This document shows positions 1 through 62,000 of a DNA stretch of 64,000 bases, one piece after another (position 1 is the first letter of the stretch; each line of letters begins with the position of its first letter). This DNA is from Octopus sinensis (taxonomy: Eukaryota): the NCBI RefSeq assembly GCF_006345805.1, contig NW_021831847.1, positions 124,001-188,000 of the forward strand. Reading direction: 5' to 3'. The position numbers and the translations under genes are program-made. Under the pieces are notes generated by a model. It was given only the letters and a program-made list of their open reading frames with translations, was not told the DNA's origin and did no database searches.

Positions 1-2800
1 CACTGCGTAGCCAAATGATCAACTGTTTTCTTGCATTTTTTGCAGTGACTGCATAAAGATCCCATGGATGTGAAGAACAAATTCCTATCCTGCAAGAGAC
101 AGTACAATGCTTCACTTCTCGGGCCAGTATTTCCTTTAGATAACTACTCTGAGGACGTAGCTAGATCAACATTTTGTTCGTCTATGCATTTGAATAGCAC
201 CGAATGTAGCATTTACAATTAATGTTCTTAAGCAAATATTTTCTTTGAGCATCTTTGATAAACTCAACACCCAAATTCTCCATGTCGAGAATTGCATACT
301 TGGAGGCGAGAAATCCTGCAATTGTGGTCATATGCCATTTATTTGTTTTTATCACACACAGGATTCCCGATCTCCGTAAGCATACTGCCGACTGCCTTTC
401 TAAACTATTCAGGAACTGGAAGAGTATCAATTCAATTCTGAAAGAAACTGAAGCAAGTCCTCTCCCAAGAGATTTCCGATTTAAATATAACCTCTCTTTA
501 TTGAGGTGAAGTCTGAGAGTCCTAAGGAGTTGTCGTATTTGACGGTCAATGCAATCAAATTCATGAGGTTAAATATTAATAAGTCCAATGTAATAATTAT
601 ATAGGGAAATGGCATATTCATTTATAGCATGGAACAGGTTGACCGCATTTAATTTCGTCTTTGAAAGCATGGTTATCCTTTTCTTTACATTTCCAAGGAT
701 AGAATCCATTACTTTACTCTTAAGAACATTACTTCCTGCATCTTCAAGTACACCCAAGTAGCGATATCCTTTGACTCCTTCCAAAGTCTCACAACAAGAT
801 AAAGATTTGACATTTGATGCAGACTTTTCTGAATTCATCTCCAAGCCAACAGTTTTAAAGAATCCATCAACAGCTTCCATCATTTTAATTACTACATCTT
901 CTTTAAGAGCGAATATCTTTAGGTCGTCAATGAAGAACAAATGATTAGTAGAATAGGTCAACATATTTGGGTCCTGTTGATTAATCTGAACCTTTGGAAA
1001 CATGGCATTAAGAATCCTGCTTAGTGGGTCCATCACCATAACAAACAGTTGCGGAGATAACGAGTCTCCTTGTAAAATCCCTCGGCTCAACTTTACAGAA
1101 CCAATTCTCCTTCCGTCAACATGGAGCTTTACAGTCCACATTCGTACAGTCCTTTTCACAAAGTTAACAATCCATAAAGGTATCCCAGAGCACTCCAACA
1201 CATGAAATAGAAAGTCGTGGTCAACAGAATCGAAAGCCTTCTTGACATCAATCCATGCAGAGTATAGCCCATTTCCATACTCTTTATTTAGGCATTGGTT
1301 AATAAGGGCCTGTTCTTTAGCACCCTGACACTGTCTCCTCGTACCAAGTTGATTGTCGGAAATTAAGCCAAATACATCCATGAACTCAGACAGTTTTCCA
1401 TTAACACACTTGGTAACTAACTTATAAAGTGTCGACATGCATGTTATAGGCCGTAAATCTTTCGGGGTCTCACAATCGTTCTTTTTAGGAATTAGATATG
1501 TAATTCCAGTATAAAACCAGTTTTCTGGCATGTAATCACCGTTGATTATTTTCTTGATTTCAACACATAAAAATTCATGCAGAGATTCTAGTCTTTTATG
1601 AAGAAATTATATATTCCGTCACATCCCGGTGCCTTCCAGTCAGGAAGATATTTAATGATCTCCATTATGTAATTATTTGTTAAATCTGGCAACATGTCTT
1701 CACTGCCGGTTATTCTTTTACTAACATTGTCCAGTGACACGGATATTTCGCGCCTTTTGCTCCATACTTTTTCCCAGAACGACATGCACTCCTCATCGTC
1801 AAAAGAGTATGTTGTGACTTCATTACTCTTTGATAAGTTTCTGTAAAATCTTCTTCTGTTTAGTTCGAAGCAAACATTGTCCTTACGGAAGTCCTTCCTC
1901 GAGTTATATACAGCAATTTGTTTTTTCTTAACTCTGATTAGGTCATGTAGTAAGGATTCGATTCTCGAAAGCTCTCCTTTTTTCTTCTTTTTATATCCAT
2001 AACGACATAGAATATCCATCACATTTTGTTTTTCACACTGTGGCAGAGCCTGTCTTACGTAACAATTTACAAGTTCTAGTTCTGCGGATAATTTTGAGAT
2101 CTTCGCCTCGGTATTTCCCAACCATGTGGTCTGTGGCTTAACTTTCTTAGTTAAGACTGAGTAGGCACACTGGGCAGCATATAAAATATCACAAATTGCA
2201 TTGATATCTCGAGGTGGATCGTCCTTTGTAATATGATATATTGCAGAGTTTAATCCCATTAAAATATCAGCTTTGACATATTTTCTTGGAATTTTCCATG
2301 TAGGCTTACGAGCCTCTCTCGGTATCGATTTAACTTCCTTAATTTGGAAATTAATCTCTTCCAGGCAATTTCTGAAATTGGAGATTTCCACTGTTCCCTT
2401 GTTGGGAATTGTTTGCTATTAGATCCACCAGCTTCATTATTGTTACCAACTACTGGTTTGAGATTGGCCATATTTTTCAATCTGGTTAGACTCGTACTCT
2501 CAGAAAATTTCACGTTGAACTTTTCAAGGATAAAACTCCAGCCACCTCTGGTATTCTCCCCAGTCTTTGTCTGGTGGCATGAACAGCCTGTGACACCCAT
2601 TCATTCTTAGAGACACAATCGACATCCTCAATAATGGCAGAAAGAGTGTGAAAGTTAGTATTGGCAACACGACTTCCAAACGTAGGGTTATTGTTTATAT
2701 AAGCTCTTGTGGCATTATCCAGCCCCAGAGACATCGTTCCTGCATCCACCATATCTTTTTTATAATTTACTTCTGCAGGAGGGCCCATGGGATTCATTTT
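1..2800 (-). mobile_element. Near full-length RLE-type (R2/R4/NeSL-like) non-LTR retrotransposon, ORF split by several frameshifts, running off the left edge
   Basis: ORF 569..1531 has RT motifs LRPITC, DVKKAFDSV, GILQGDSLSPQLF, LFFIDD and YRYLG. Upstream pieces lie at 1588..2391, 2259..2600 and 2510..2797. Bases 1-80 on the minus strand read CSHCKKCKKTVDHLATQ, the zinc knuckle preceding the RLE domain. Confidence 0.9.
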
Positions 2801-17759: not shown

Positions 17760-18460
17760 ATTTACCCATAATTGGAATATTTGAAGGTGACTTTTGTAGA
17801 ATAAACTTTTCCATAGTCTCAATTGCACACATTGCATCACAGAAACCAATTTTCTCTACATCTCATCATTTTTATTCTCTTGATCCTTATCTTCACTGGA
17901 CTCAATTGTTCCTACAAATTCTTCATCATTGATGTTGCAAATTTTATAGGAACAATTTTCATTATTATCTGAAACCGGAGAGTCCTCCTTCATAGTAGAC
18001 TCACCCGGAGTGTCCTGCTTTGCCCAAATGTTAGATGCTTTTCGAACCAATTCGTTACTGTTGTTTATGTAATTTCATCCCACGCTTCAATTATCAATGG
18101 TATTGCATCTACTAGTTTGATATTTCTGATTTTCTTTGAGATCATAAAATGACATTTTCGACAAAAAGTCAGCATTGGTTTCATATTGCTCATCTCCTGA
18201 TATAGTACGAGATTTTATTCTAAATTTATTCTTAAAAAAATTAATCCATGTACTTGAAGCCTTAAAATTCAGAAATGAAAATTTTTTATTTCCATTTGTT
18301 GTAGAATTCCGTTTGTAATAGTATCGCCGAGTGATCTTTTATTCTGAATCCATTCATAAAGCGCCATGTGAATTAAGGAAAATTTTGTTAGAATTCTTAA
18401 TTTTCAAAATAGGATTCATTGCTTGGGATTTTGTTTATTGTTTCAATTGGCTTGTTGAAT
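17760..18460 (-). mobile_element. Tigger/pogo (CENP-B HTH) transposase remnant
   Basis: ALYEWIQNKRSLGDTITNGIL...FKASSTWINFFKNKFRI matches the Tc5-type HTH. Confidence 0.7.
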
Positions 18461-32828: not shown

Positions 32829-34346
32829 ATGCTTTTTGGTCGTTTGTTTACACGACTTAGTAAATCTTCTATTTCAAAAAATAACCGATTTTACAAGCTA
32901 TTTGGGAGCTCAATTCCGTGTCTCGTTGGAAGTATCTGCGGTTATTTCTACTACGATAACAGTCCTTACATACACATGACTGGTAGTATTAAAGAAAACT
33001 TTGAAAATGGGGAAAATAGTAGCAAATATATTCAAAAACTACCAAATCACGTGCAATATTTGCTGATCGGAGACGGAGTGGAAATATTCTCCGCCGCTCA
33101 GGCGATTCGTGCCTCGGATGTGACTTCAAAAGTTGCAGTGGTGTGTCCCCGTGGTCACCCGCCTTACATCAGGGACGCATTTGTTAGGGAATTTGTCGAC
33201 TTTGATCGAGACATCTCTTCTAGACAAGAAATATACAATGTTTTCAAAAAATTGTTTTTTGAGCAACCCAATTTTTATTTGGACATTTCGGATTATTCAA
33301 ACATCGAAAATGGGGCAATTTTCATTGCAAACAACTTAAGAGTCGATTCAGTAGACTCGGAATCCTGCACGGCAAAGTTTGGCCCAGAAATTGTGAAATT
33401 CGACCGCTGCCTTGTCTCACCCTCCGCTGTTCCTAAAATCTCTCGGAACCTAATTCACAACTTGTCTACATTTGACGATTTTTTGGACATTTTTTCGGTC
33501 TTGTCGGAGGCTAAAAATGTGATAATAAGTGGAGATTCGATAATGGTTGCACAACTTATTTCAATCCTTCAAACCCACCCTCAACGATTGTTCAATTTAA
33601 CTTATGTTCGTCGTTCAGATCGCCCTCTACTGTCGGGAGTTCTTCCTCTTCATTTGGCTCAAGTTGTGGAGAATGAACTGGAGAAATATGGTCTAAAAGT
33701 GATTATCACAAAAGAAAACACAGAGACTGTCTGTCCTCACGGCGTGAAGGTTAGTCTGTGTTTGGAAGATGGGGTCACTGTTGAGGGGGACCTATATATT
33801 GAAATTTCGCCAGATTCCAGAATAAACCATCTCTTCGGGACTTCTAGTAGCGATGAAGGGGAAGTTATGGCCGACAAATATTTGAATGTTAGTCCAAATA
33901 TTTGGGCGGTCGGAGATTCCGTATCTGTCGAGAATTTTTACTTTGGAAAGAGGTCATTTCAAGGATATGACAATGCATTCATGTCGGGAAAATTGGCGGG
34001 TCTGAATATGACAGGACATGAAATGATTCACAGAATCATTCCTATGTTTTGGTCGTATGTGGGTCCCATAGAATTGGAAGGCTGCGGAGTCCTCGATCCA
34101 GTTTTGAGAACAGTCTCAGTATTTGAAGACGAACAAGCAAAGAGCATTTCGGAACGACGAGGAGTGATATTTTACTTGAATGAAGACAGTGTTATTGTTG
34201 GAGTATGCCTTTGGAATCCAACGAGAAAATCTTCTTCTCATCTATTACGACAAGTGGTTGCCAGTAAAATGAAGGAAGATGATATTCTGGGAGTTAGCAA
34301 GTTAATCAACCTGTTTGATGTTGAAGATAATAATGACGAGCCTTAA
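32829..34346 (+). CDS. AIFM1: Apoptosis-inducing factor, mitochondrial (divergent, intronless)
   Basis: Presequence-like N-terminus plus TM, PNHVQYLLIG..AAQAIRA, PPY, IWAVGD, AFMSGKLAGLNM, PMFWS and GVIFYL...VGVCLWN all match AIF. Confidence 0.85.
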   Translation: MLFGRLFTRLSKSSISKNNRFYKLFGSSIPCLVGSICGYFYYDNSPYIHMTGSIKENFENGENSSKYIQKLPNHVQYLLIGDGVEIFSAAQAIRASDVTSKVAVVCPRGHPPYIRDAFVREFVDFDRDISSRQEIYNVFKKLFFEQPNFYLDISDYSNIENGAIFIANNLRVDSVDSESCTAKFGPEIVKFDRCLVSPSAVPKISRNLIHNLSTFDDFLDIFSVLSEAKNVIISGDSIMVAQLISILQTHPQRLFNLTYVRRSDRPLLSGVLPLHLAQVVENELEKYGLKVIITKENTETVCPHGVKVSLCLEDGVTVEGDLYIEISPDSRINHLFGTSSSDEGEVMADKYLNVSPNIWAVGDSVSVENFYFGKRSFQGYDNAFMSGKLAGLNMTGHEMIHRIIPMFWSYVGPIELEGCGVLDPVLRTVSVFEDEQAKSISERRGVIFYLNEDSVIVGVCLWNPTRKSSSHLLRQVVASKMKEDDILGVSKLINLFDVEDNNDEP

Positions 34347-36324: not shown

Positions 36325-37031
36325 TTAGTCACTGAGCAAGCAGTCTAACTCTGCAATATCCATATCATCGAACAGTCCCTCTTCAATGCAGTAATCTTCC
36401 TCATCTTTTATCCCTGCAAAGAACTCCTTGCCTACACACTCAGCACATTTATTACCCGTCATTCTCACAATACACTCCTGACTCTCACTCATTTCTTTCT
36501 CAAATTGTACTTTCCAACGAGAAAAAGACTCGACGGTCACAGGCGTCCCCCACCGCTCTGGTTCGTCACCAACAGTCTCCCCCTCCACGCACACAATCCT
36601 CTCACTGACCTGTCGACTCCCTCGAGAATATTCCTTCTCAAACTCGGGTAGAAGACTCAATAGTTCGAATATCATCGGAAGTCCCTTCAGTTTGCTGGCC
36701 TGTGACATTTAATCACTTTTAGAGCACGTGAAGGCTGAGAAAGTCCTCAAGTTGAGTAGCAAACTCCTCGGAGAGATTAGTGAGATCCGCCACCTTGAAG
36801 AATGGGGGGACATTCGGATATTCGTTGGGAAGTGAGATGCACAGGGAAAATGAGGCTGTGGTTGGAAATTTTGATGTACCTTCAAGGAGAGCGATCCTAT
36901 TCTGTAGTTGGAGTGAGAATTTGTAGACGGGAGGAGTGGAGGATATGACTACTCTCAGTTATATCCAAATTACTGGTTAGATTGTCGGGGTAAATGCACT
37001 CCAATGATAATAACTCCTCCGCGACGCTCAT
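36325..37031 (-). CDS. RWDD1: RWD domain-containing protein 1 (Gir2-like), spliced
   Basis: EELLSLECIYPD, GLPMIFELL, GTPVTVESFSRWKVQFEKE, MTG|KEFF (24-nt in-frame intron) and an acidic tail EEGLFDDMDI. Confidence 0.88.
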
Positions 37032-38064: not shown

Positions 38065-39330
38065 GGAGGGCAAACTCAGGCAGCTCTATCTGCAAGATTC
38101 AACTGTTCTCAGTCTCAGGTTTCATGGATTTTGAAGAATAGAGATAAGTACCTATTCGAGTCGCAAATGAACGTAGAAACTGCATTGTCCGTCTTGTTTG
38201 CTCAAACCAGGACCAAAACCTACCAATAAATGGTCACATACTAACCCACAAAGTTACTTACTTTGCTAAAATTATGAAAATGGATGACTTTATTCCTACT
38301 TCAAGTTGGCTTATGCGTTGGAAAGAAACAAAATATCATTTAAACGTATTTATGGGGAGAAAAAAGATTCCGATTTAAATTCTGTTGAATACTGGTACTA
38401 ATGGACATTGCAAGATCTTTTAAAAGATTCTAAACCGGAAAACATTTATAATAAAACAGCACTCATATGAAATACGGATCGAAAGTAAAGAAAAATTAAG
38501 GATAGAATAAATGTAATGGCATCCTGCAACATGACGGGTTCGGACAAACACAAATGAAGGTGCTTCAAAGGAATTTAAACACTTCCAGTTGACTACATTG
38601 TCAATAAGCTATCACGTCAATTTCAGTAGAATTGTAGAATGCATGGATGACATGACGCGTTTTTAAAAACTGGTTATCATGTGGTAACAAGAAAATAATA
38701 TTGCAAAAAAGAAATATAGCCATAGTTTTTGACAATTGTGCTGCGAATTCAAAAGATTCTGGAAAAAATCAATCAAATGTTAAATTGTCTTTTATCCCCA
38801 TGCATTCGGCCATGTGATATGGGGATCATAAAAAGTCTAAAGCACGACTACAGATTGGCAATTTTACAAAAAGTGATTGTTGTAATTAATTCAGACGATA
38901 GTTGTCGCAAATCTGTTGTGAATTTTACCACTTCCTTGGATGCGCTACACATTCTCAAAATGGCTTGGAGGCAAGTCAAAATAACAATTTAAAACTCTCC
39001 GTAAGGCGGGATTCCAGGAGGAAGTGTGGGAAAATACGTTTAGTAACGTTAAATTTGACAAAACATGTTGAGGATGAAGAATGTATTTGAATCATGTCCG
39101 ATGAAGAAATATGTTTAATGTCAAGAGATATTTCTTCCAAAGACGATGGGGACGATGAAGATCCCATGCCCCTAAAAACAACCAGTTCGGAAGCTATGTT
39201 GATACGTTAATTTCTTACTAGCAGCTATTTAACAAGTGAAATGGATATGGAAAACTTTAATGAACCAGAAAAAAGCGTCCCACGCCTTTGCCAAAAGACT
39301 AGGAAGTACAGACCACAATGAGGATTTCCC
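38065..39330 (+). mobile_element. Degenerate Tigger/pogo transposase
   Basis: QAALSARFNCSQSQVSWILKNR (psq HTH), PINGHIL...SWLMRWK, FDNCAA and PCDMGIIKSLK. Confidence 0.75.
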
Positions 39331-40203
39331 TCAACGCAGAGGAACTTGACGATTTCTATTCGTCCTTATGATCGGCTTACTTATCCCTGTCCAGCTCCGA
39401 CATGCTCTTTATAGCTGGAGATTAAAATGCAAAAGTGCAAAACGCCTTGACAAATCAATTTGCCTGGGCAGTTTCGAAGGATCAGAAATCTGTCCGGAAA
39501 GCACTCATATTTTTTTATAAGTAGTTTGCACTGTTCCTCTGTAACAAGACATTCCGACAAGCAGCTCGACATGCTACGACGTGAACAGGCCAGAAAAAAG
39601 ACTGCTATGTAACATTCAATAAAATTGATTACATACTATGCAGACAAACACAGAAGGGGTTATTCACAGACTTCCGTAAGTACAGTGGCATGATTACCTT
39701 GAGTAATCACCGTTTCATTGCACCTTGTACACAGGAAAGGATATTGGCCGTGCAGACCTTTTGTGTTTCAGATAATATTCATATAAAGTATGGCGAGAAA
39801 TACTCAAAATGCTGCACACTATTAAATAGACTACTATGGAAGTATATTTCGATCAGAGTTAAAAAGGCTGCTGAGTGGAATTCGTCCAAGGACATTCAAG
39901 GAAGTTTTGACAAAGAAATAAACAAATTAGCAAAGAACAAAAGAAACTCCATCGATTAAATGAATCTTAAAACACAATCGACCTCACTGATTTTTGACTG
40001 TACAACTCAGAATTCAACTTTACAAATGTCGATCCGATCCTCCTCTACAACTCTAACCGCTAAAGAACGGAAACAGATAAACTATTTTCACATAAAAGTC
40101 TATAAGAAATTGATAATATCACTTCCAATATTTATGAATAAAATTTATCTAATAATTATATCTTTATATAATAAAATTAAGTTTAATTAAAACAACAGTG
40201 TAG

Positions 40204-40864
40204 ATGGAGAAGGCCTTATTTGCAATGTCCTGATTTTGGGGTCCGGAGGCACTATTTGGGTGTGTCTCCGGCGTAATTAGAACGAGGGTTGGATTTACTG
40301 GTGGGAAAAAGCTCAACCCTTCATATCACAATCTGTAAAATTAGTTAATAAATTCAACAGAGGAGATCATACTGAGACTGTCGAAATTGAGTTCGATTCA
40401 AATATAACATCCTATGAAAAACTTGTCGAAATGTTTTGGGAGAATCACGACTATAAATCCTTGAGAACACGGCAATACATGTCTGCCATTTTCACTCTCA
40501 GTCACAAACAACTCGCTGTGGCCATGTCTTCTAAAATCAATCATGAAAACGTCGGGGTGGTCAACACAGTCGTAGAACCAGCCGGAAAATTTTATGTAGC
40601 GGAAAAGTAATTACTTAACCTAATTGTGGTTAGTTATCATCAGAAATATATATTGCGCACATGTTCAAAGATTTTCGACGCTTTGAAGTTGAATGACAGC
40701 CAAGTAATTGAATCACATGCGGCCTGTAGACTGAACGGTTATCTCGCTGGATATGGGAATTTAGAAGCTTTTGACAAAGTTTTATTTTGAAATATAGTCA
40801 GGAATGTGGAGACTGGGGACTTTCAGAATCTGTTTTGGAAAAAGTTAGAGAGATTATCAAATGA
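40204..40864 (+). CDS. MSRA: Peptide methionine sulfoxide reductase A with in-frame TGA (probable selenocysteine) at the catalytic position; 4 exons
   Basis: MEKALFAMS-TGA(40231-40233)-FWGPEALFG...GDHTETV...FWENHD...QYMSAIF...FYVAENYHQKY...SHAACRLNGY. Introns 40335-40360, 40607-40633 and 40779-40801. No other disruption; stop at 40862-40864. Confidence 0.92.
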
Positions 40865-40876
40865 ATGATTTGTTTT

Positions 40877-40937
40877 ATTCCCGATGTGACGAATTTGAAC
40901 GCAAGTTTGGTCATTTTCTGAAATACGGATGAATAAA
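40877..40937 (+). promoter_or_regulatory. Candidate SECIS element (GUGA variant) followed by AATAAA
   Basis: GTGA (40886) ... TGAA (40919) can form the GA/AG core. Upper stem gaa..tga/tca..ttc, apical AA with c-gcaa-g, lower stem attc.ccg/cgg..gaat. Folded by eye only. Confidence 0.55.
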
Positions 40938-41399
40938 ACAAATTAATTAATCTTTAACCAATATAATAAAGTCATTAAGACTGGATTGAAATACGCGGTA
41001 CGAAGGGTAGTCGGCTTCGTTGTCTAATTAGTGTGGCGTTATTTAGAGCAACGGTTCTTAGATTTGGCTTTCAGGAGGTTTTAGTTAGTTAGTCGCTCCG
41101 AACTGCCGGCATGCAGGAAGCCGGTTACTATTAAACGACGCACAGCCTTGGGCGGTCTCTCTAAGGATCTCAAAGCGCTGCGTGTTGAGCGAAATTACCG
41201 TTCAATACCTTAACATTGTGCACAATGACTGGCCTGGATTGCAAATTCTGCCACAATATTACTAAACTGGCTCTTGATATCGAGTTGGACGTTGAGAATT
41301 TGTGATTCCAAAACATCCCTCACGTCCGTCCCCGGCTGGGAGTTCCACTTTGTTAAACGATAAATCTAAATTAGCTGCAAGCACCAATAACTTTATTGA

Positions 41400-44325: not shown

Positions 44326-45748
44326 ATGCTAATTATCTTTTGTTTGACTGTTGTATTTCAATTTTCAACACCAATCGAGTTATGATTGGATAAAACTATT
44401 TTAGTGTTCCAGAATATACAATAAATCTCGATTTGTCTCCTCATGAAAGATGGAGAGAGGTCCTTACTGACAAAAACGAATCAGTTGAAATAAAAATAAT
44501 AATTTTAGATTTGGGCAATTAAAGGATTTATTGAAAAATTGATAAAAGATGTCCCATTTGTTGGAAAAATTATTTTAAATAAGATCAGCCATTTGGATGT
44601 AAAATTATATAAATTTTAATAATTAGAACTATTTATACAAAATTCCGATTAAATATCAAAACGAAATTAGAGCAGCACATGAAATTACCAAAATTGACAG
44701 GGGTTAGTCTTAGTTAGTTGAATTGTCGAAGGGTGGTTGATTATGATGAATTTTTTAATGGAAATAACCACGTTTTGTACTTCAATCGTGGCTAAGAACT
44801 CGAATGGAGGTTCTTCTTTCTATTTACATAATATAGAACAATTTTTTGCTAGAAGTCTCGATTTTGGTTTACTTGGGTTTATTTTTTCAATATTGACTAA
44901 CAAATTTAGATTTGATTTTGTTCATCGATCATTTCCAATGGTCGATTATATCAGAAATCTTACAGTTATTACACATTTTTACAGAGGAGGGGAGTCTTTG
45001 TTCACTTCTATAACCTCTGCCGGATATTTTGGGGTAATTACCGGACTTAAAAATGTTGTTTTCTAAATTTATATATTCAGGGAAAATTTGCTGTGAGCAT
45101 AAATCAGAGAGTTGAGCCTCTAAAACAACTTCCTGGACTTATTTGTGAGCTTCTTCATTAATATATTAGCATTAATTGAATTTATTTTCATCGGTTGTAA
45201 AAAGAAACAATTTGCATCATTTTTGGTCAGAGATGTCCTTGAAAGTTCTTCCACATATGACGAGGCTGTAAATCGACTCAAATCAACTCCCATTATATCG
45301 CCATGCTACTTCATTGTGGGTTCAGTTAACGAATCAGATGTTTTGTAAAATTAATGACTTTGAAAGGGGACTGTGATTACACGTACCTCTACCAAATACA
45401 ATCTTTGGAATATGACCGACAATAGCAACATTGGGAATCCATGGTTTATTCTGCAGACAAATTATGATCATTATTCAAATACACACTTTGGCGATAATAG
45501 ACGTCAAAAGGGATACCAATATATGAGAGAAGCCAGTATAAATGTACTAATTCTACTATTAATGATGATTAGTCCATGGGAAATGATGGATTGATCAATG
45601 TACTGAGTAAAATTCCTCTGCTAAACAAGGTCGTTTTGTTTTGCTTTAGAATTAGTTGACTGTATATTCTGTCGTATTTGACATTAAACGATCTGAACTT
45701 TTGCTTAAGATGCAGTACTGTACTCAGCCCGAATGTCCTCTCTTTTAA
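44326..45748 (+). CDS. ASAH1: Acid ceramidase-like Ntn hydrolase (ASAH1/NAAA family), multi-exon
   Basis: VPEYTINLDLSPHERWRE, nucleophile CTSIVA, RSLDFG, AGYFGVITGLK, ILQTNYDH and C-terminal CTQPECPLF. Confidence 0.8.
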
Positions 45749-46186: not shown

Positions 46187-47020
46187 TCCGGGAAAGACCG
46201 ACTGGCTCTAGAGTGGAAAGGAAACCTGCCGACTCTAGAGCTCTTCTGACAACGTCGTTGAGTTGAGAGTGGCGGAGAATTCAACCAGCACTCTTCCTGA
46301 AGACAAGGCCTTAGTCCCGTTTGGCGAAATTCTTGTCTGCTCTTTTCTCCTGTTTCTATTTTTTTTATTTTTTTCTCTATTATTTGTTTAATCTTATTCC
46401 TGTCTTTTTCTGCCAACCTTATTTGATTTGTATTTTTTTCTTGTCTTTTTTATCTTAGTGTTTGTCTTTCTCGAGACGGCATTGAAAAAACCGAACGGGA
46501 GAATTTGCCCCGTCCTAATTATCAACGTTTTCAAAAAATTTTCTGCAAAAATTGTCAATCGGAAAATTGTTCCTTCTGCCAACAATCTCTTGCTACTTTC
46601 AAGTGCCTACTAGCTACAGCTCATGGCATATGTCACATTGTTTTTTAAAAGAAAATTTACTTTCTCTTAAAACTTTATGTTTCAGATGGGTTTAACCTAG
46701 TCGGCCTTGATCATATTCTTGAAGTTGTTCATAATCATTTCCCTTCTTTATATCCCATCTCTTTATATCCCTGGCTGCCTTTTTTCTAGAGATAGTATTA
46801 TTTGGTTCAATACAGGAATCCAGCAACTTCCCCTCTCTTTCGCCTTGTCTGTCGATCCCGTTGCTAGTTTCCTAAATCCAAAATGAATTTTTGGTATTTC
46901 GACGATCTCACTTTTGGGAAGTCATTTACTTGGTTCTAAATAGAGTTTACTAAAAATCGAAAAAAGTCCTCAAACTTAATTTTGTTTAAATGTTTGATGA
47001 ACACTAAAGTTAATGTTAGT

Positions 47021-49532
47021 CTACTACAGGGCGAACCTTAAGGTAAGAAACATCAGAATTGTGGAGGAGTCACTCTGTGAACTTATTGTGCTCGAGCTGC
47101 ACACGACTGCTGGCTGGCTAACCGTCGGGGGAATGTACTCAAAGTCGCTAAGGCGCTATTCAAACGTTATTGGGACGTTCTTTGAGGAAAATTGCCTGTC
47201 AATCCTAGCAGGAGATCTTAATGCCAAAAATGTGAGTTATGGATGTGAAACTACGAATATGGATGGAACTGTCCTTGAGGACTTGGCCAGTAGCTTGGGT
47301 TTTTCGGTCTTTACATCGGAAGAATTGAATCATTATGCAGACAGAGGCAGGGCTGATCGCTTGGGTCTCTTTCTATGCTCGGCATCAATTAGTCCTTTAT
47401 GTTACATACCGAGGTTGGAAGCGGACATTGGCTCTGACCACGTGCCGCAAACGATGTTGATAAAGATGACTATGAATGTTACGGAGGACTTGTTCATTGG
47501 TTACAACCTCGTGAACATGAACTGGAGTTTATTCGAATCATATATGCGGGATTCTCTTCGAAATGTCGTGTCTCAGCCTCTGAGAAGCAGAGATGATATT
47601 GACAATCTCGATGATCACCTTAGATCGTCAATCATAAAATTCCTGGATGTTTATGCATTAAAAAATGTATGGAAACCCAAAGGAACGCAAAAGCGGATGA
47701 ATTCGAAACTTGTCACTCTGATCAGAACGAAAGGTACCCTGGAAAATCGCAGGAGAAGATGTCGGGTTGAGTCAATCAAATGCCGCCTGAAATTGGAGAT
47801 CGACAAGATAAAATTTACTATTGCAAAAATGGCCAAGACTGAGGTCGAAAGTAAATGGAGGTCTGAATGCAGAAAACTGGATAAGCGAAACCCTAATTTC
47901 TGGAAAGCATATCAACGCCTTACCAGAAATGATGCCAAAGGATTTGAAATTTCACTAAAAGAACCAGACGGGAAATATATCTCCTCTGATCGTATCCCGG
48001 AAGTACTCAGGAACCAACTTAGTCAGGTTCAAGAGGTCGAATCTACCGTTCCACGAGGGACTTATGACCGAATTGTGAAGAAGCTTGGCTCTTCGCAATT
48101 ATCGGAGGGACCATTATGTGGGGCGATAACACAGGAAGAGGTTGAAAGGGCAATTGCTGGGTTGAAGAACAAGGCGCCTGGCTTCGACTACATCCCTCCG
48201 AAGTTGTTAAAGAAGGCCCCTGAAATCTTGATACGAGCATTGACTATGTTGTTTCACGCCAGCTGGACGTTCGGACACCTTCCATCGGCGTGGAAGCATA
48301 CGATTGTTCGAATGATTCCAAAATCTGGTAAATCGACACTGCTGGCACAGAACTACCGGCCAATTAGCCTCATTTGTGCTTTCTCTAAGACAATGGAAAA
48401 GATTGTCTTTAACAGACTCTCTGGTCATATAGAATCACAAAATTTGCTTTTACCTGAACAATGGGGATTTCGTGGAGGAAGATCCACAGGGGACTGCCTC
48501 AGGGAGTTAGAGCACCAATTATCCCGTGCTGACAGAAATGAAGCATGGCTAACTGTGGTGTGTCTGGATCTGGCCAAAGCCTTCGATAGCGTGTGGCACC
48601 TGGGCCTACTCTCCAGAATCCATGACATCGGAGCCGGGATAAAGACCTATCGATGGCTGGAGAGCTTCTTGTCAGGAAGACAATCATTTGTCCGCTGTGG
48701 AAACCGTCTATCGGGGTGTGTGGAACTTAGAAGGGGAGTCCCGCAGGGATCTATCTTGAGTCCACTTCTGTTCAACCTCTTCTTGGCGGACATTCCTCTG
48801 CCGTCGACACGTACTGGCAAGCTCGTTATCTATGCTGACGATATCCTGGTCATGGATACCTCGAAAAGGATATCGCAGTCTTGGAGACGACTGAAATCAT
48901 ACATTGCAACGCTAAAGATGTGGACTATAGAGAAGGGTTTGACCCTAGCACCGGAGAAGAGCACCATTTCATGGTTGCGGAGAGGGAGTCGCTATGCGGA
49001 GTCTTGTGCATATGCGATGAGTAGCTATGTGATGGATCTCTCGAAAAGAAAAAATCTTTCTTACCTGGGAGCAACCATTAACTGTCGTGGCTCGTACGTA
49101 GAGCATATAGCAAATCAGAGAAAGAGGAGTGTGAGGATCCTGAAAAGCTTAACCAGGTTCCATCTGGATCCGGAAACGTACATCTACGTATACAAAACGT
49201 GTGTGCAGCCAGTCCTCACATATGGCTACGAGGGCTGGTACGGTACGGAGGAGAGTGACTACCTGATCGAACAGTTGGAAAAGACAAGACGTCTCGCTAT
49301 GAAATTGGCTTACGGAGTACAACTTGACGGAAGGCTAAAAGACTCACAAGAATCCTCTGTGCCCACGATCCGGATGGTCTTGGAGAATTGTCGTCAAACA
49401 TGACTAGTATTGGGGATACGCATGGAAAGAGACACTTCGGTGCCTTGTTTTTATCTCCCCGCCGATGTTTTTCTTCCTTGTTTTTCTTTTTCTTTTCGCT
49501 CAATAAACACTATTCTATTCTATTCTATTCTA
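47021..49532 (+). mobile_element. Young 5'-truncated APE+RT LINE (Jockey/I-like) with open ORF2 and (CTATT)n tail
   Basis: 16-bp TSD taaagttaatgttagt (47005-47020, 49533-49548). ORF 47013..49403 with GDLNAK, GSDH, NYRPISL, DLAKAFDSVWH, GVPQGSILSP and YADD. Confidence 0.97.
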
Positions 49533-54105: not shown

Positions 54106-54219
54106 CTGGCTATCTTAAAAGGTTTATGTTAGATAATTTAGAAAATAAATATGTAAGAAAACTACTGTCGATATGGAAAAAAGAAAATAAAAACTACTGG
54201 GAGTTAAAAAAAACATTTC

Positions 54220-54620
54220 TTCCGGGCGTTTTATTACGTGTATTTTATTCGCAATTTCTAACTTAGCTTCAATCGAGACTTTCCCAAGCCTTCTGTTTTT
54301 CGTAAACAGGGTCAAAATAGATTTTTCCGGACTTGCCTCCAGTTCGTTTTTATATAGCCATGAAATCAGATTGTTGAGGTTATCCTGTATTCTATCCGTT
54401 GCTTTTATCATGCTCACATCCCTTGATGCGATAAATAAATGATAATAAATAAATGCATATAGTAATAACAGATCGTTGTCCCCTTCTGGCTGTGGTATGT
54501 CGTTTATCATGCGATTGAATAAAAGTGGAGATAGTGGAGAACCCTGAGGGACCCCATTTGGTAATAGTCTCGATATGAAAGATCTGTTTCCACAGCAAGC
54601 CCTTCCCCATTTGGTAAATG
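54220..54620 (-). mobile_element. RT fragment
   Basis: GVPQGSPLSPLLFN...LYA...ASPEKS. Confidence 0.8.
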
Positions 54621-55197
54621 TTTCCACTTGGGTTTTACTGGTGATACTCAACTTCTTTAATTCATTTAATTGTTTGTGTTCTTCTTGTCGTCGAATTTTC
54701 ATATGAAGTGCAGCTTTTCTTTTCTTTTCAATTCTAAACAAAAAAGTATCAAAAACTATTACTTTGCCAAACTGTTTTGATCTTTATTTGATAATTCAAA
54801 ATCATTTCCAATTTTTTCCATACATATTAACATTTTCCAATTTAAATTGGAGTTATAAGTTTTTAAAAAGTGAAATTAACTCAATTACTTTCAGCCAGTT
54901 TAGGAGTTGTGTTTAATCAAATTTCCAACGAACATTCCATCAAATAAATGATCACTTTGCTTTTTAAAATGGAAGAAAAATTTAAAAATCAGATATTTGT
55001 GATAACTGACTTAAAAAATATCCCAATGCTCTCCTCTCCCTCATATATTCCCTACAATCATTGATCTCCAGTCAATAGGAAACAATCTATAAACCACTCT
55101 GTCGTCATTTACATCCATCTCACGATTACACAACTTTTAGTACTACAAGCACTATTTGCTCATAATTAGATAATCAAAAAATAATATGTAAATAAAA

Positions 55198-57850: not shown

Positions 57851-58325
57851 ATAAGAGCAATGTCAAATAAAATAAATATTTAGATTATATCATCTTGTTA
57901 AATGTTCTGACACTCTGGATGAGAATAAGGATGGAAAATAAAATAACAGTGTTGAGAAATTAGAAAAAAATATAAACAGATTATAGGAATAAACTCAAAA
58001 AATATCACAAAATGATTAATTTTCAGATAATGTAAGCATTAAAAGAATTCAATCACAGATTATTCCTTTAAATCCATTTACATAAAAAATAAAGTGCAAA
58101 TTAAATAATAAACATAATCAAACTACCATAAAAAAATTCCAACAAATGCATCAATAATACACGTGTCATTAATAATAAAATTTATATATATAAGATTGTC
58201 AGGAGGGTGCCTGCTTTACGCCCCCGGAATTTCCTCTCTCCCCATTCCTAACTTAATTTGTTTTCATTTGGTACAATAAAACCAGGTCAAATATTAAAAA
58301 AATTATATAAACTTAATAAAATAAA

Positions 58326-58440
58326 AGTACGACACTGTTTGTTCCCAGTAGGTCACCCAGCAAGTACTAGAACATCCTGTAATCGCTTAACTGCCGTGTT
58401 CGGATGGGAACGGTATTTACGACTAAGTCTGATCGTAAGT
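58326..58440 (-). rRNA. 5S: 5S rRNA gene or slightly degenerate copy, followed by an oligo-T terminator; a 3' fragment also lies at 56776-56799
   Basis: The minus strand ACUUACGAUCAGACUUAGUCGUAAAUACCGUUCCCAUCCGAACACGGCAGUUAAGCGAUUACAGG...UAGUAC...GGGAAC...GUGUCGUACU has helix I (UACGA/UCGUA), helix II (UAGUCG/CGAUUA), CCGU/ACGG closing a 12-nt eukaryote-type loop, and the loop E motif. Helix IV is imperfect. Confidence 0.85.
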
Positions 58441-60059: not shown

Positions 60060-62000
60060 CAAATCTACGAGATATGTTTTTGAAAATCATGACCGGCCGA
60101 CAGTTTTCCACTGCCCTCTCCAAAATGAACAGTGGGTTGCACTCTAATAAAACGTCCTCGTTTTTCATTTTTCTTATTTGCCAGTGTTTTAGATAAGAAA
60201 ACGCTTTTTAACTGAGTTTAAATGCCAACTTTGTCGACAATAATTCGTGCTGTGCCCCTCTTTCCTGAGCGAAAGGAGAAGAAATCATTCTTAAATCGGT
60301 GGATGGAGGCTTTGTTCCTACTGAGGAAGTCCCGGAGGTCTTCCGCCAGCAGCTAGCAGGGATTCAGGAGGTGGACCCTTCGTCTATCCTGCCTCTGAAA
60401 ATATTCGAGGAGTCGACCCGAAATTCCCGCTCAAAACTTGTTTTGGATGGACCCTTGTGCAGAGAAATAACCACGGAAGAGACGTTCGAAGCAATCAGAG
60501 GTTGCAAGAACAACGCTCCTGGATTTGACTTCATCCCTATGGAGGTGTTCAAGAAGGCACCCGGATGCTTGCTTCGTATTCTGGTGAAACTATTCAATGC
60601 CAGTTGGGACAATGGTCACGTCCCATCTAGCTGGAAACGAACAATCGTCCGAATGATCCCAAAACCTGGAAAACCAAATACGCAGGCAGGAAGTTATAGG
60701 CCAATTAGCCTTATCTGCACAACGTCGAGGATAATGGAAAGAATTATTTTCAATCGTTTATCGGCTTACGTGGAACAAAATAATATACTCGCGGAGGAAC
60801 AGTGGGGTTTTAGACCTGGTCGATCAACCGGTCACTGTCTCTCGCTTCTTGAGGAAGAACTGACTCGGGCCAAACAACATAAAGCCTGCCTAACGGCGGT
60901 CTGCCTGGACGTCTGCAAGGCCTTTGACAGTGTCTGGCACTTGGGGTTGTTAGATAAAGTAGCGGAGTTGGGTGCTGGGCGAAAAACTGTCGGATGGCTT
61001 AAGGACTTCTTGTGCGAGAGAAAATCGTTCATTCGTTGTGGAAATTTGCTATCGAAGGCCGTGAATCTGAGGAGAGGTGTTCCTCAGGGATCGGTTCTCA
61101 GCCCCTTGCTCTTTAATATATTTCTGGCCGACGTTCCGAAACCACATTTTCCTACGAGCAGACTAATTATCTACGCAGACGATATCTTGGTTACGGATGT
61201 CTCGATGTGGGGACCCCGACACAGAAGAAGGCTGTCCTGGAGCAGACTAGAACCGTACTTGGAGGAACTTGAAATCTGGTGCAATGGTAAAGGCTTGAAT
61301 CTCGCTTTGGACAAAAGTACCATTTGTTGGATTTCAATGGGTCGTGACAAAAAACCGACTTTCGAGGATTATGGGAACCTGATTATATCGAAGAACCTAC
61401 GTTACCTGGGAGTAACTATAGACCCCACCGGGTCATACAAACCCCATGTGCATGCAAAGCGGAAACAAGGAGCGAAAATCCTAAAAGGACTGAGGCGTTT
61501 TTGTCTAAGCGCAGAAACGTTTCTACACATCTACCAGACTTGTGTTCAGCCACTAATAATCTATGGCTCGGAGGGCTGGTACCAAACTGATGAAAGGGAC
61601 CTTCTAATCGCCAAACTCGAAAAAACCAGACAATTTGCCATCAAACTGGCATTCGGCCTGGAGCTCAGCAGTCCGCTGGAAGACCTACATGAGCGGAGTG
61701 TTGACACGATTGACGCGATCCTGGCAAAAACTCGAACTCGCTGAGGGAGATAAGACAGTCTCCTGGGGCAAAACCGAAGTTGAGACCTTCGTGGCTCTCG
61801 TTATCAAGCCCCCTAAGCTCTAATTCCTCGGCCACTTTTCTTTTGGACCTATTGTAATAAATAAACCATATTCATTCATTCTTTCCTGAGCGCATGCATG
61901 TATTGGTAGTGGTTTATAAGTTCTCTAGTTTATATTTGATTGAATAACTCTTTTATGTGGCCATACCCAATGTGAGGCACGTGTAAATTAAAAGCGCTTT
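60060..62000 (-). pseudogene. MRPS7: uS7-family (MRPS7-like) gene interrupted by the LINE at 60272-61879
   Basis: Removing the LINE and one TSD gives TNTCMRSGKRGTARIIVDK|AFSYLK...LECNPLFILERAVENCRPVM, matching the uS7 pattern. Extra small frameshifts; C-terminus not found. Confidence 0.65.
60272..61879 (+). mobile_element. Young 5'-truncated LINE (RT only) with (ATTC)n tail, same family as 47021
   Basis: 13-bp TSD tctttcctgagcg (60259-60271, 61880-61892). Open RT ORF with SYRPISL, KAFDSVWH, GVPQGSVLSP and YADD. Confidence 0.96.

What the first reader, a model, noticed from the sequence alone, without database searches (positions are those of the whole stretch)
40204..40937. Hidden selenoprotein: MsrA with UGA at the catalytic cysteine plus a candidate SECIS
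Seen: the active site reads AMS-TGA-FWG where MsrA has GCFWG. The remaining ~185 codons over four exons are intact, with all conserved motifs, and a SECIS-like hairpin lies between the stop and AATAAA. TGA also ends this and other ORFs, so the codon is not globally reassigned. Established: Sec-MsrA exists in some algae, bacteria and invertebrates, while vertebrate MsrA uses Cys; UGA recoding needs tRNA-Sec, PSTK, SEPSECS, SEPHS2, EEFSEC and SBP2. Inference: this miniaturised genome retains a working selenocysteine system with a very short 3' UTR and a non-canonical GUGA SECIS. The gene is entirely absent from the ORF track.
Basis: partly seen in the sequence, partly recalled or inferred. Interest (0 to 1): 0.88.

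Follow-up and report, generated by a model that had tools for sequence, protein, structure and literature searches.

The report
Selenocysteine MsrA gene of a dicyemid parasite
The in-frame TGA is real and sits exactly where related animal MsrA genes encode selenocysteine, so this is most likely a working selenoprotein gene of a known family, apparently from a dicyemid parasite whose DNA was assembled into an octopus genome.

Summary
Observation confirmed. A four-exon gene (40204-40864, + strand; GT..AG introns of 26, 27 and 23 nt) encodes a 193-residue MsrA (Pfam PMSR 2.7e-35, plus the 'selenoprotein MsrA helical domain'). Its only in-frame stop is TGA at codon 10 (40231-40233), in the catalytic position.

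All eleven homologous transcripts I fetched carry TGA at this same codon (..MS-TGA-FWFPE..). The window protein keeps 33 of 34 residues invariant in its homologues. It is therefore a conserved Sec-type MsrA, not a decayed pseudogene.

The 3'UTR hairpin (40866-40945) fits the SECIS primary consensus: R-UGA-N, AA 12 nt on, and KGAW. Such a match is rare by chance (about 0.3%). However, its helix 2 is weak (8 of 11 pairs, 6% ensemble probability against 0.5-1.0 for most pairs in five confirmed SECIS), and the minimum-energy fold buries the UGA.

A second SECIS-like structure lies inside exon 3 (40693-40752). It folds well, but its statistical support is weak.

The selenocysteine machinery and transcription could not be tested.

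The contig belongs to the Octopus sinensis assembly, but its ultrashort introns and orphan proteins point to a dicyemid. Verdict: a new member of a known kind, of moderate interest.

The parts
40204..40334 (+). Exon 1 of the MsrA gene. ATG at 40204, with an in-frame TAG just upstream at 40201-40203. Contains the Sec codon.
40231..40233 (+). In-frame TGA (codon 10) at the catalytic Cys/Sec position, in the motif FAMS-U-FWGPE.
   Evidence: homologous transcripts carry TGA at the same aligned codon
40335..40360 (+). Intron 1, 26 nt, GT..AG.
   Evidence: the junction ..SYHNL|GDHTE.. aligns without a gap
40361..40606 (+). Exon 2 (GDHTE ... FYVAE).
40607..40633 (+). Intron 2, 27 nt, GT..AG.
   Evidence: the junction FYVAE|NYHQKY aligns without a gap
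40634..40778 (+). Exon 3. Carries the end of the PMSR domain and the start of the C-terminal helical domain.
40675..40773 (+). Alternative SECIS-like element of type II shape, entirely inside exon 3. AUGAC 40693-40697; helix 2 40698-40710 with 40736-40748 (11 of 13 pairs); AA 40711-40712; GGAU 40749-40752; helix 1 about 40675-40690 with 40758-40773.
   Evidence: it is the local minimum-energy fold; helix 2 probability 0.5-0.93. Weakened (the pattern arises in 1.8-4.5% of synonymous shuffles; MFE z = +0.6). Absent from 11 homologous coding sequences.
40779..40801 (+). Intron 3, 23 nt, GT..AG.
   Evidence: the junction AFDK|ECGDWG aligns without a gap
40802..40864 (+). Exon 4 coding part, ending in the stop codon TGA at 40862-40864.
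40866..40945 (+). 3'UTR SECIS candidate of type I shape. Helix 1: 40866-40883 with 40926-40945 (15+3 bp, 2-nt bulge). G 40886 precedes the quartet UGAC 40887-40890. Helix 2: 40891-40901 with 40908-40918 (8 of 11 pairs, tandem U.U). Apical loop CAAGUU 40902-40907, with AA at 40903-40904. 3' quartet UGAA 40919-40922.
40932..40937 (+). AATAAA poly(A) signal, embedded in the 3' arm of helix 1. A second AATAAA starts at 40965.

Best explanation
The locus is an intact, selectively maintained gene for a selenocysteine-containing methionine-S-sulfoxide reductase A. It belongs to the subfamily that has a PMSR domain plus the C-terminal 'MsrA helical' domain.

The gene sits in a genome with 23-27 nt introns. 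That genome is most probably a dicyemid (renal parasite of octopus) whose DNA was co-assembled into the Octopus sinensis genome.

Proposed mechanism. Translation starts at 40204. UGA at codon 10 is recoded to selenocysteine, which serves as the catalytic nucleophile. Cys20, in the conserved FGC motif, is a candidate resolving residue.

Recoding is directed by a SECIS element in the same mRNA. The most likely one is the hairpin that fills the roughly 85-nt 3'UTR (40866-40945: G-UGA-C ... AA ... U-GA-A), with the poly(A) signal inside its basal helix. The terminal UGA lies only 22 nt before the SECIS core, below the minimal UGA-SECIS spacing of 51-111 nt, so it acts as a stop.

Shown: the gene structure, the homology of the TGA to the Sec codon, protein-level conservation, and the presence and rarity of the SECIS-like motif.

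Inferred: that Sec is really inserted, which hairpin is the functional SECIS, that the Sec machinery is present, and the dicyemid origin.
For: (1) Pfam PMSR 2.7e-35 and PF20939 1.9e-9. The best PDB matches cover residues 4-193 at E about 1e-45 (4LWJ-M, 4U66, 7C13). Classical MsrAs match only the PMSR domain, at about 1e-22.

(2) All 11 homologous transcripts fetched (L002-L013) have an in-frame TGA at the aligned codon (..MS*FWFPE..). The database proteins show W there because the gene caller read TGA as Trp. NCBI models from sponge, starfish, shrimp and bivalves are truncated at or just downstream of that codon.

(3) Conservation runs across the TGA: window KALFAMS-U-FWGPEALFGC against P0004 KATFAMS-U-FWFPEAQYGC. 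Residue -1 is Ser (or Ala) in the animal-type Sec forms, whereas all Cys forms, and two FWGPDA-type Sec forms, have Gly.

(4) 33 of 34 columns invariant among 16 homologues are kept, and the single change is L to V. 21 of 29 columns conserved at 85% or more are kept. There are no frameshifts, and all six splice sites are intact. By contrast, the neighbouring AIF-like protein has no homologue at E <= 1e-10 in 5.8 billion proteins. So MsrA is under strong constraint in a fast-evolving genome.

(5) The 3'UTR hairpin is far more stable than shuffles (z = -3.6 to -4.0). Two other 3'UTRs in the window are not.

(6) The hairpin satisfies the SECIS primary consensus R-UGAN / AA at 10-13 nt / KGAW, with a G:C first pair of helix 2 (consensus from PMC2647825). 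Only 5 sites in 128 kb meet this strict pattern, and only 0.31% of shuffles of the hairpin interior do. The same strict pattern recovers the SECIS in 5 of 11 homologous transcripts.

(7) A very short spacing between the stop codon and the SECIS has a precedent. In homologue L005 the stop is also TGA, and the SECIS core lies 43 nt after it.

(8) Sec-MsrA is documented as widespread in marine invertebrates (PMC3473315).
Against: Helix 2 of the 3'UTR candidate is weak: -2.2 kcal/mol, 8 of 11 pairs, with two adjacent U.U mismatches. In the thermodynamic ensemble it forms with probability about 0.06. In five confirmed family SECIS most helix-2 pairs form at 0.5-1.0.

The minimum-energy fold (-23.8 against -20.4 kcal/mol) pairs UGAC with GUCA in a plain helix.

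Rfam SECIS models do not hit the region, although they also miss the SECIS regions of three Sec-MsrA transcripts. A covariance model built from five homologous SECIS scores the region at only 8.4 bits, and it uses a different 3' GA.

SECISaln lists MsrA among families with type II SECIS in all species investigated; this candidate is type I.

No independent copy of the gene was found: no reads, no cDNA and no orthologue from another dicyemid. Transcription is therefore unverified.

The Sec machinery was not examined. Parasitic flatworms are reported to have lost Sec-MsrA (PMC3828610).
Confidence: 0.7

Rival explanations
1. It is the same selenoprotein gene, but the functional SECIS is the type II-like element inside coding exon 3 (40693-40752). 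It acts either alone or together with the 3'UTR hairpin.
For: It has a canonical AUGA, AA 13 nt after the quartet, a GGAU 3' core and 11 of 13 helix-2 pairs. It is the local minimum-energy fold, and its helix-2 probability of 0.5-0.93 is within the range of confirmed SECIS. No such pattern occurs in the 11 homologous coding sequences (7.3 kb). Two of the five strict SECIS-pattern sites in 128 kb fall in this one gene. SECIS elements located in coding regions have been shown to function in eukaryotic cells (PMC1802603).
Against: Given this amino-acid sequence, the pattern appears in 4.5% of synonymous-codon shuffles at 8 of 11 pairs or better, and in 1.8% at 9 of 11 or better. The native fold is no more stable than the shuffles (z = +0.6). 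The 3' core GGAU comes from conserved Gly-Tyr codons. Cellular eukaryotic SECIS elements are otherwise found in 3'UTRs. The covariance model R1 did not score the element.
Confidence: 0.12
2. It is a dead or dying gene. The lineage has lost selenocysteine decoding, or this copy is a recent nonsense allele, so TGA simply terminates translation after nine residues.
For: The Sec machinery is untested. Parasitic flatworms lost Sec-MsrA. The 3'UTR SECIS candidate is thermodynamically poor. No transcript evidence was found.
Against: There is no second defect in 193 codons. All splice sites are intact. 33 of 34 invariant residues are kept, in a genome whose other proteins are extremely diverged. The TGA is the ancestral state of the family rather than a new mutation. 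A specific, highly structured 3'UTR with SECIS motifs is retained.
Confidence: 0.1
3. It is an assembly or sequencing error, or a case of non-Sec decoding. Either the true codon is TGT or TGC (a Cys-type MsrA), or UGA is read by a near-cognate tRNA as Cys or Trp.
For: Only one assembly was available. The segment after the codon reads FWGPEALFG, as in the Cys form P0096.
Against: A substitution error would have to land exactly on the family's Sec codon. Residue -1 is Ser, as in the animal-type Sec forms. TGA terminates this ORF and others in the window. Trp at the catalytic position would leave the enzyme inactive.
Confidence: 0.06

Closest known systems
Sec-containing MsrA of marine invertebrates (Amphimedon, Trichoplax, Nematostella, Capitella, Branchiostoma; Jiang et al. 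2012, PMC3473315), together with the crustacean-like, mollusc and echinoderm transcripts and proteins found here
   Same: Same domain architecture (PMSR plus MsrA_helical). Sec codon at the same aligned position within ..MS-U-FW.PE..FGC... 46-51% identity over the full length. GDHTE, RQYMSAIF and AE.YHQKY motifs are all present.
   Different: The motif is FWG rather than FWF after Sec. There is no N-terminal extension and no C-terminal ..G.C tail. The 3'UTR is about 85 nt, against 0.1-1 kb in most homologues. The SECIS candidate has G instead of A before UGA, is type I rather than type II, and has a much weaker helix 2.
Bacterial selenoprotein MsrA with solved structures (PDB 4LWJ, 4LWK, 4LWL, 4LWM, 4U66, 7C13). 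From memory, these are the 1-Cys type selenoprotein MsrA of Clostridium (Alkaliphilus) oremlandii; the tool names only the molecule.
   Same: Full-length match over residues 4-193 at E about 1e-45, including the C-terminal helical domain that gives Pfam PF20939 its name.
   Different: Bacterial Sec insertion uses a SelB-dependent SECIS immediately after the UGA. Here the candidate elements are of the eukaryotic K-turn type and lie hundreds of nucleotides downstream.
Classical Cys-type MsrA (bovine 1FVG, E. coli 1FF3, human mitochondrial 6AGV)
   Same: PMSR fold, with the catalytic residue in the G-C-F-W-G motif at the N-terminus of the domain.
   Different: Only the PMSR domain matches (E about 1e-22). 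These enzymes have Cys rather than Sec, a different C-terminal region and different resolving cysteines.
Caenorhabditis elegans thioredoxin reductase SECIS (Buettner et al. 1999, cited in PMC2647825). That its divergent feature is a G before the UGA quartet is recalled from memory, not read in the paper.
   Same: [quoted passage not shown] So GUGA lies within known functional variation.
   Different: A different gene and phylum. I did not compare the two sequences.
SECIS elements inside coding regions (fowlpox virus GPx4 homologue; Mix et al., PMC1802603)
   Same: It is a precedent for the exon-3 SECIS-like element: a eukaryote-type SECIS located in the ORF downstream of the UGA.
   Different: That case is viral. 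No cellular animal gene with an in-ORF SECIS is known to me, and the evidence for the exon-3 element here is weak.

Membership tests
Selenoprotein MsrA (PMSR + MsrA_helical subfamily) | PMSR catalytic domain (PF01625) | tested here: met
   E = 2.7e-35, residues 3-135, profile positions 1-147 of 153
Selenoprotein MsrA (PMSR + MsrA_helical subfamily) | C-terminal helical domain (PF20939) | tested here: met
   E = 1.9e-9, residues 145-193. Full-length PDB matches to 4LWJ and related entries.
Selenoprotein MsrA (PMSR + MsrA_helical subfamily) | In-frame UGA aligned with the catalytic Cys/Sec, and with the UGA of orthologous mRNAs | tested here: met
   TGA at 40231-40233. 11 of 11 homologous transcripts have TGA at the same codon. 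Cys forms have C at that position.
Selenoprotein MsrA (PMSR + MsrA_helical subfamily) | [quoted passage not shown] | tested here: met
   KALFAMS precedes the codon and FWGPEALFGC follows it. 33 of 34 invariant columns are kept. There is a single open frame across four exons.
Selenoprotein MsrA (PMSR + MsrA_helical subfamily) | A functional eukaryotic SECIS element in the same mRNA | tested here: inconclusive
   There are two candidates. The 3'UTR one fits the primary consensus and is rare by chance, but has a weak helix 2. The exon-3 one folds well, but is weakly significant and unusually placed. Rfam and my own covariance model give no convincing hit.
Selenoprotein MsrA (PMSR + MsrA_helical subfamily) | Sec machinery in the same genome (tRNA-Sec, EEFSEC, SECISBP2, PSTK, SEPSECS, SEPHS2) | not testable with these tools
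   The window holds no tRNA gene and no motif of another selenoprotein. The rest of the genome cannot be searched here.
Selenoprotein MsrA (PMSR + MsrA_helical subfamily) | Transcription, splicing and selenium incorporation | not testable with these tools
   No matching transcript-derived protein is in the database.
Eukaryotic SECIS element (3'UTR candidate 40866-40945) | Quartet UGAN/KGAW, with R 5' of UGA | tested here: met
   G-UGAC with UGAA. The first helix-2 pair is G:C, as in the consensus.
Eukaryotic SECIS element (3'UTR candidate 40866-40945) | Unpaired AA in the apical loop, 10-13 nt after the quartet | tested here: met
   AA at 40903-40904, 12 nt after UGAC
Eukaryotic SECIS element (3'UTR candidate 40866-40945) | A stable helix 2 of about 11-16 bp without consecutive mismatches | tested here: not met
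   8 of 11 pairs, tandem U.U, -2.2 kcal/mol, ensemble probability 0.06 against 0.5-1.0 for most pairs in five confirmed SECIS. The minimum-energy fold is a different structure.
Eukaryotic SECIS element (3'UTR candidate 40866-40945) | Located in the 3'UTR, more than about 51-111 nt downstream of the Sec UGA | tested here: met
   The element lies between the stop codon (40864) and the poly(A) signal, about 575 nt of mRNA after the Sec codon.
Dicyemida (assignment of the source organism) | Ultrashort spliceosomal introns (<30 nt), GC about 37%, LINE-rich genome, host Octopus sinensis | tested here: met
   Introns of 23, 26, 27 and 27 nt in two genes. Window GC is about 0.30-0.46, mostly 0.32-0.40. 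Reverse-transcriptase ORFs are present. The contig belongs to the O. sinensis assembly. Literature values come from PMC6736024 and PMC13644364. No direct sequence match to a dicyemid could be made.

The most novel reading that the evidence does not exclude
Dicyemids are among the most reduced animals (about 30 cells, about 5,000 genes). Under this reading they keep the full selenocysteine recoding system and drive it with an extremely compact or atypically placed SECIS. That SECIS would be either an 80-nt element that fills the whole 3'UTR and carries the poly(A) signal in its basal helix, or an element inside the coding exon. The second would be the first in-ORF SECIS in a cellular animal gene.
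Probability: 0.12. Interest if true: 0.7.

Novelty: new member of a known kind. Interest (0 to 1): 0.4.

Why it matters
Sec-type MsrA is already known in algae, bacteria and many marine invertebrates, so the gene family itself is not new.

Three things would be new:
- This would be the first indication that a dicyemid uses selenocysteine. I found no paper on dicyemid selenoproteins in the searchable literature. Parasitic flatworms are reported to have lost Sec-MsrA.
- The SECIS would be unusually compact or unusually placed, which could help define the minimal requirements of eukaryotic Sec recoding.
- There is a practical point. A 429-kb contig in the Octopus sinensis reference assembly, with RefSeq proteins labelled as octopus, looks like parasite DNA. 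Standard gene callers missed this gene, or translate its homologues with Trp at the Sec codon.

Tried and rejected
1. Rfam scans. At gathering thresholds over the whole window, only 5S rRNA was found. At E <= 10 over 40780-41100 there was no SECIS family, only a weak mir-355-like hit that reflects the long stem. As a control, Rfam also finds no SECIS family in three Sec-MsrA transcripts, including the SECIS located in L005. The negative result is therefore uninformative.

2. Covariance model R1. I built it from five homologous MsrA SECIS with their apical parts trimmed. It recovers its own training sequences at 36-43 bits, but scores L005 at only 15.9 bits. It is over-fitted to closely related sequences. 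In the window it gives no hit at the locus at E <= 10. Searched locally, it gives 8.4 bits.

3. An alternative register for the 3'UTR element, using GGAU at 40927-40930 as the 3' core. This gives a canonical asymmetric internal loop. I rejected it because helix 2 collapses after 6 positions and the energy is only -13.6 kcal/mol.

4. A search for an independent dicyemid copy. The full-length query gave at best 47-50% identity. The exon-2 peptide query gave a single distant hit.

5. A search for other selenoprotein genes in the window, using active-site motifs with TGA read as X. Nothing convincing was found. ARAGORN found no tRNA in the window.

6. SECIS-like hits elsewhere in the window, at 17962(-) and 48064(+). 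Both lie inside transposon-derived ORFs and I judged them chance matches.

7. The supplements of the dicyemid genome paper. They contain only the pathway label 'Selenocompound metabolism', with no values.

8. The idea that the hairpin belongs to a repeat family. The sequence is unique in the window.

9. Reading the terminal TGA as a second Sec codon. I rejected this because the extension would run through the hairpin and has no homology to the C-terminal tails of the homologues.
Full report
**1. Observation**

The + strand from 40204 reads ATG GAG AAG GCC TTA TTT GCA ATG TCC TGA TTT TGG GGT. Removing three GT..AG introns gives one open reading frame of 193 codons ending in TGA at 40862-40864. 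The introns are 40335-40360 (26 nt), 40607-40633 (27 nt) and 40779-40801 (23 nt). The only internal stop is the TGA at codon 10 (40231-40233).

With that codon masked, the product matches Pfam PMSR (2.7e-35, nearly the whole profile). It also matches PF20939, 'Selenoprotein methionine sulfoxide reductase A, helical domain' (1.9e-9). The three exon junctions fall inside ungapped, conserved stretches of the family alignment (SYHNL|GDHTE, FYVAE|NYHQKY, AFDK|ECGDWG).

**2. The TGA is the family's selenocysteine codon**

A search of 5.8 billion proteins returned 1,238 relatives, the best 47-50% identical.

- Many metagenome- or transcriptome-derived hits read ..F[GA]MS-W-FWFPE...
- NCBI models from a sponge, a starfish, shrimps and bivalves begin at or a few to about 20 residues after that position.
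- Insect and spider proteins have GMGCFWG.

I fetched the DNA of eleven W-containing hits (L002-L013). In every one the 'W' is an in-frame TGA at the aligned codon (the last two, L012 and L013, were inspected only as proteins carrying W there). The gene caller had simply read it as Trp. So the window's TGA is homologous to a codon that is TGA across this family.

The literature supports this. Sec-MsrA was reported as widespread in marine invertebrates and replaced by Cys in vertebrates (PMC3473315).

The closest solved structures (4LWJ-M, 4U66, 7C13) match over residues 4-193 at E about 1e-45. Classical MsrAs match only the PMSR domain, at about 1e-22.

**3. The gene is under purifying selection**

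Of 34 alignment columns invariant among 16 homologues, the window protein keeps 33, and the exception is L to V. It keeps 21 of 29 columns conserved at 85% or more. Conservation extends upstream of the TGA: KALFAMS against KATFAMS in P0004. Residue -1 is Ser (or Ala) in the animal-type Sec forms, whereas Cys forms, and two FWGPDA-type Sec forms, have Gly.

The next in-frame ATG is codon 67. A product starting there would lack the catalytic motif.

This conservation stands out against the genomic background. The neighbouring AIF-like ORF (32829-34346) has no homologue at E <= 1e-10 in the whole database. Such conservation makes sense only if the full-length protein is made, which requires decoding of the TGA. 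This is the main, though indirect, argument for a working Sec system.

TGA is not reassigned in this genome. It ends the MsrA frame where homology ends, and it ends two reverse-transcriptase ORFs.

**4. The 3'UTR hairpin**

The 94 nt from the stop codon fold at -24.2 kcal/mol (z = -3.6; 0 of 200 shuffles as stable). In a second test z = -4.0, against +0.3 and +1.8 for the 3'UTRs of two other genes in the window. The sequence is unique in the window.

Read as a SECIS, it has these parts:

| Part | Coordinates |
|---|---|
| Helix 1 (15+3 bp) | 40866-40883 with 40926-40945 |
| Unpaired G before the quartet | 40886 |
| Quartet, 5' side (UGAC) | 40887-40890 |
| Quartet, 3' side (UGAA) | 40919-40922 |
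| Helix 2 | 40891-40901 with 40908-40918 |
| AA | 40903-40904, in a 6-nt apical loop |

This matches the published primary consensus: UGAN/KGAW, a purine before UGA, and G:Y as the first helix-2 pair. [quoted passage not shown] 'GUGA' is therefore within known variation.

I ran a strict ungapped pattern: R-UGA-N, AA at 10-13 nt, KGAW, and at least 8 of 11 helix-2 pairs including the closing pair.

- It occurs at only 5 sites in both strands of the window (128 kb).
- It occurs in 0.31% of 200,000 shuffles of the hairpin's interior.
- It recovers the SECIS in 5 of 11 homologous transcripts.

The poly(A) signal AATAAA (40932-40937) sits in the 3' arm of helix 1, so the 3'UTR would be about 85-110 nt. 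One homologue (L005) likewise has a TGA stop with its SECIS core only 43 nt downstream. The terminal TGA here lies 22 nt before the core. That is below the minimal functional UGA-SECIS spacing of 51-111 nt (PMC3753652), which explains why it would terminate translation rather than recode.

**5. Weaknesses of that SECIS reading**

- Helix 2 has 8 of 11 pairs, with two adjacent U.U mismatches and an A.G, and contributes only -2.2 kcal/mol.
- The unconstrained minimum-energy fold (-23.8 kcal/mol) pairs UGAC with GUCA in a regular helix. The SECIS-type fold costs -20.4 kcal/mol.
- In the ensemble, the SECIS-type helix-2 pairs have probability about 0.06. In five confirmed SECIS of homologues most helix-2 pairs lie at 0.5-1.0. 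The nearest-neighbour model ignores the sheared G.A pairs and protein binding, so this is a caveat and not a refutation.
- Rfam finds no SECIS. It also misses the SECIS regions of three Sec-MsrA transcripts.
- A covariance model built from five homologous SECIS gives only 8.4 bits locally and prefers another 3' GA. That alternative register folds poorly.
- The homologous SECIS I located mostly look type II with strong helices, and SECISaln lists MsrA as type II in all species investigated. This candidate is type I.

**6. A second candidate inside the coding sequence**

The same scans flagged an element wholly inside exon 3: AUGAC 40693-40697, helix 2 40698-40710 with 40736-40748 (11 of 13 pairs), AA 40711-40712, a small helix 3, GGAU 40749-40752, and a roughly 14-bp helix 1. 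It is the local minimum-energy fold, and its helix-2 probability is 0.5-0.93. None of the eleven homologous coding sequences has such a pattern. In-ORF SECIS elements can function in eukaryotic cells (PMC1802603).

However, with the amino-acid sequence held fixed, 4.5% of synonymous-codon shuffles show the pattern at 8 of 11 pairs or better, and 1.8% at 9 of 11 or better. The native fold is no more stable than the shuffles (z = +0.6). I therefore treat it as a minority alternative.

**7. Source organism**

The AIF-like ORF is found on contig VCDQ01011214.1 (429 kb) of GCA_006345805.1. This is the Octopus sinensis assembly, and RefSeq labels the protein as octopus (XP_029654636.1).

Several features argue against an octopus origin:

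- Introns of 23-27 nt occur in MsrA. A 27-nt intron (45340-45366) occurs in a neighbouring acid-ceramidase-like gene; that family assignment rests on my reading of the sequence, because Pfam gave no hit.
- GC is mostly 0.32-0.40.
- There are several LINE reverse-transcriptase ORFs.
- The AIF-like protein has no detectable orthologue in any other octopus.

Among animals, introns under 30 nt are known only from dicyemids and myxozoans (PMC13644364). Dicyema japonicum lives in O. sinensis kidneys. Its genome is 36.7% GC, 49% repeats with many LINE ORF2 copies, and has very short introns (PMC6736024). The MsrA itself is metazoan-like. A dicyemid contig in the octopus assembly is the coherent reading, but I could not match it directly to dicyemid sequence.

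**8. What is known about dicyemids and selenium**

The dicyemid genome papers do not mention selenoproteins. The one paper containing both terms is unrelated. Parasitic flatworms lost Sec-MsrA while free-living planarians kept it (PMC3828610).

**9. Verdict**

The best explanation is a genuine, conserved Sec-MsrA gene (confidence about 0.7). Its SECIS is probably, but not securely, the 3'UTR hairpin.

The rival explanations are:

| Rival | Confidence |
|---|---|
| The functional SECIS is the exon-3 element | about 0.12 |
| A recently dead gene, or loss of Sec decoding | about 0.10 |
| A sequencing error or non-Sec decoding | about 0.06 |

It is a new member of a known kind and of moderate interest. 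Its value lies in showing that a dicyemid probably uses selenocysteine, in the very compact SECIS context, and in flagging parasite DNA in an octopus reference genome.

The decisive tests are a genome-wide search for the Sec machinery, read and RNA-seq mapping, comparison with other dicyemids, and reporter or 75Se assays. None of these could be run here.

Noticed in passing
whole window (contig VCDQ01011214.1 of GCA_006345805.1); e.g. 32829-34346: The window lies in the Octopus sinensis reference assembly, and RefSeq names the AIF-like ORF as an octopus protein (XP_029654636.1). However, 23-27 nt introns, GC of about 36%, LINE content and the lack of any homologue at E <= 1e-10 point to DNA of a dicyemid parasite mislabelled as host.
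   Followed up: partly
window 44737-45600 (+): A multi-exon gene that reads like acid ceramidase or NAAA (..FIVGSVNESD|GTVITRTS..NPWFILQTNYDHY..) has a 27-nt GT..AG intron at 45340-45366. Pfam gave no hit on the single exons, so the family assignment is by eye.
   Followed up: partly
window 58324-58440 (-): A 5S rRNA gene (Rfam RF00001, 72.6 bits).
   Followed up: no
window 569-2391 (-), 47013-49403 (+), 54124-54741 (-), 60299-61744 (+); 38729-38992 (+): Several non-LTR retrotransposon (reverse transcriptase) ORFs and a pogo-like DDE transposase remnant. This is consistent with the repeat-rich, LINE-rich genome described for Dicyema.
   Followed up: partly
window about 17900-17965 (-) and about 48064-48130 (+): Two further hairpins with canonical AUGA..AA..GA SECIS-like geometry and strong helices. 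Both lie inside transposon-derived reading frames and are probably chance matches.
   Followed up: partly
proteins P0001-P0005, P0007-P0014, P0016-P0019, P0022-P0025, P0039; loci L002-L013: The public protein collection holds many Sec-MsrA sequences with Trp at the selenocysteine position, because the gene caller read TGA as Trp. NCBI models of the same family are instead N-terminally truncated at or just after the Sec codon.
   Followed up: yes
L005 738-830: This Sec-MsrA transcript also ends in a TGA stop codon, and its SECIS core (AUGAA at 783) lies only 43 nt downstream. Rfam's SECIS models do not detect it.
   Followed up: yes
window 36325-36708 (-): The last exon of a DRG-family-regulatory-protein/RWDD1-like gene (weak Pfam DFRP_C hit, E = 0.0015), ending in TAA.
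   Followed up: no
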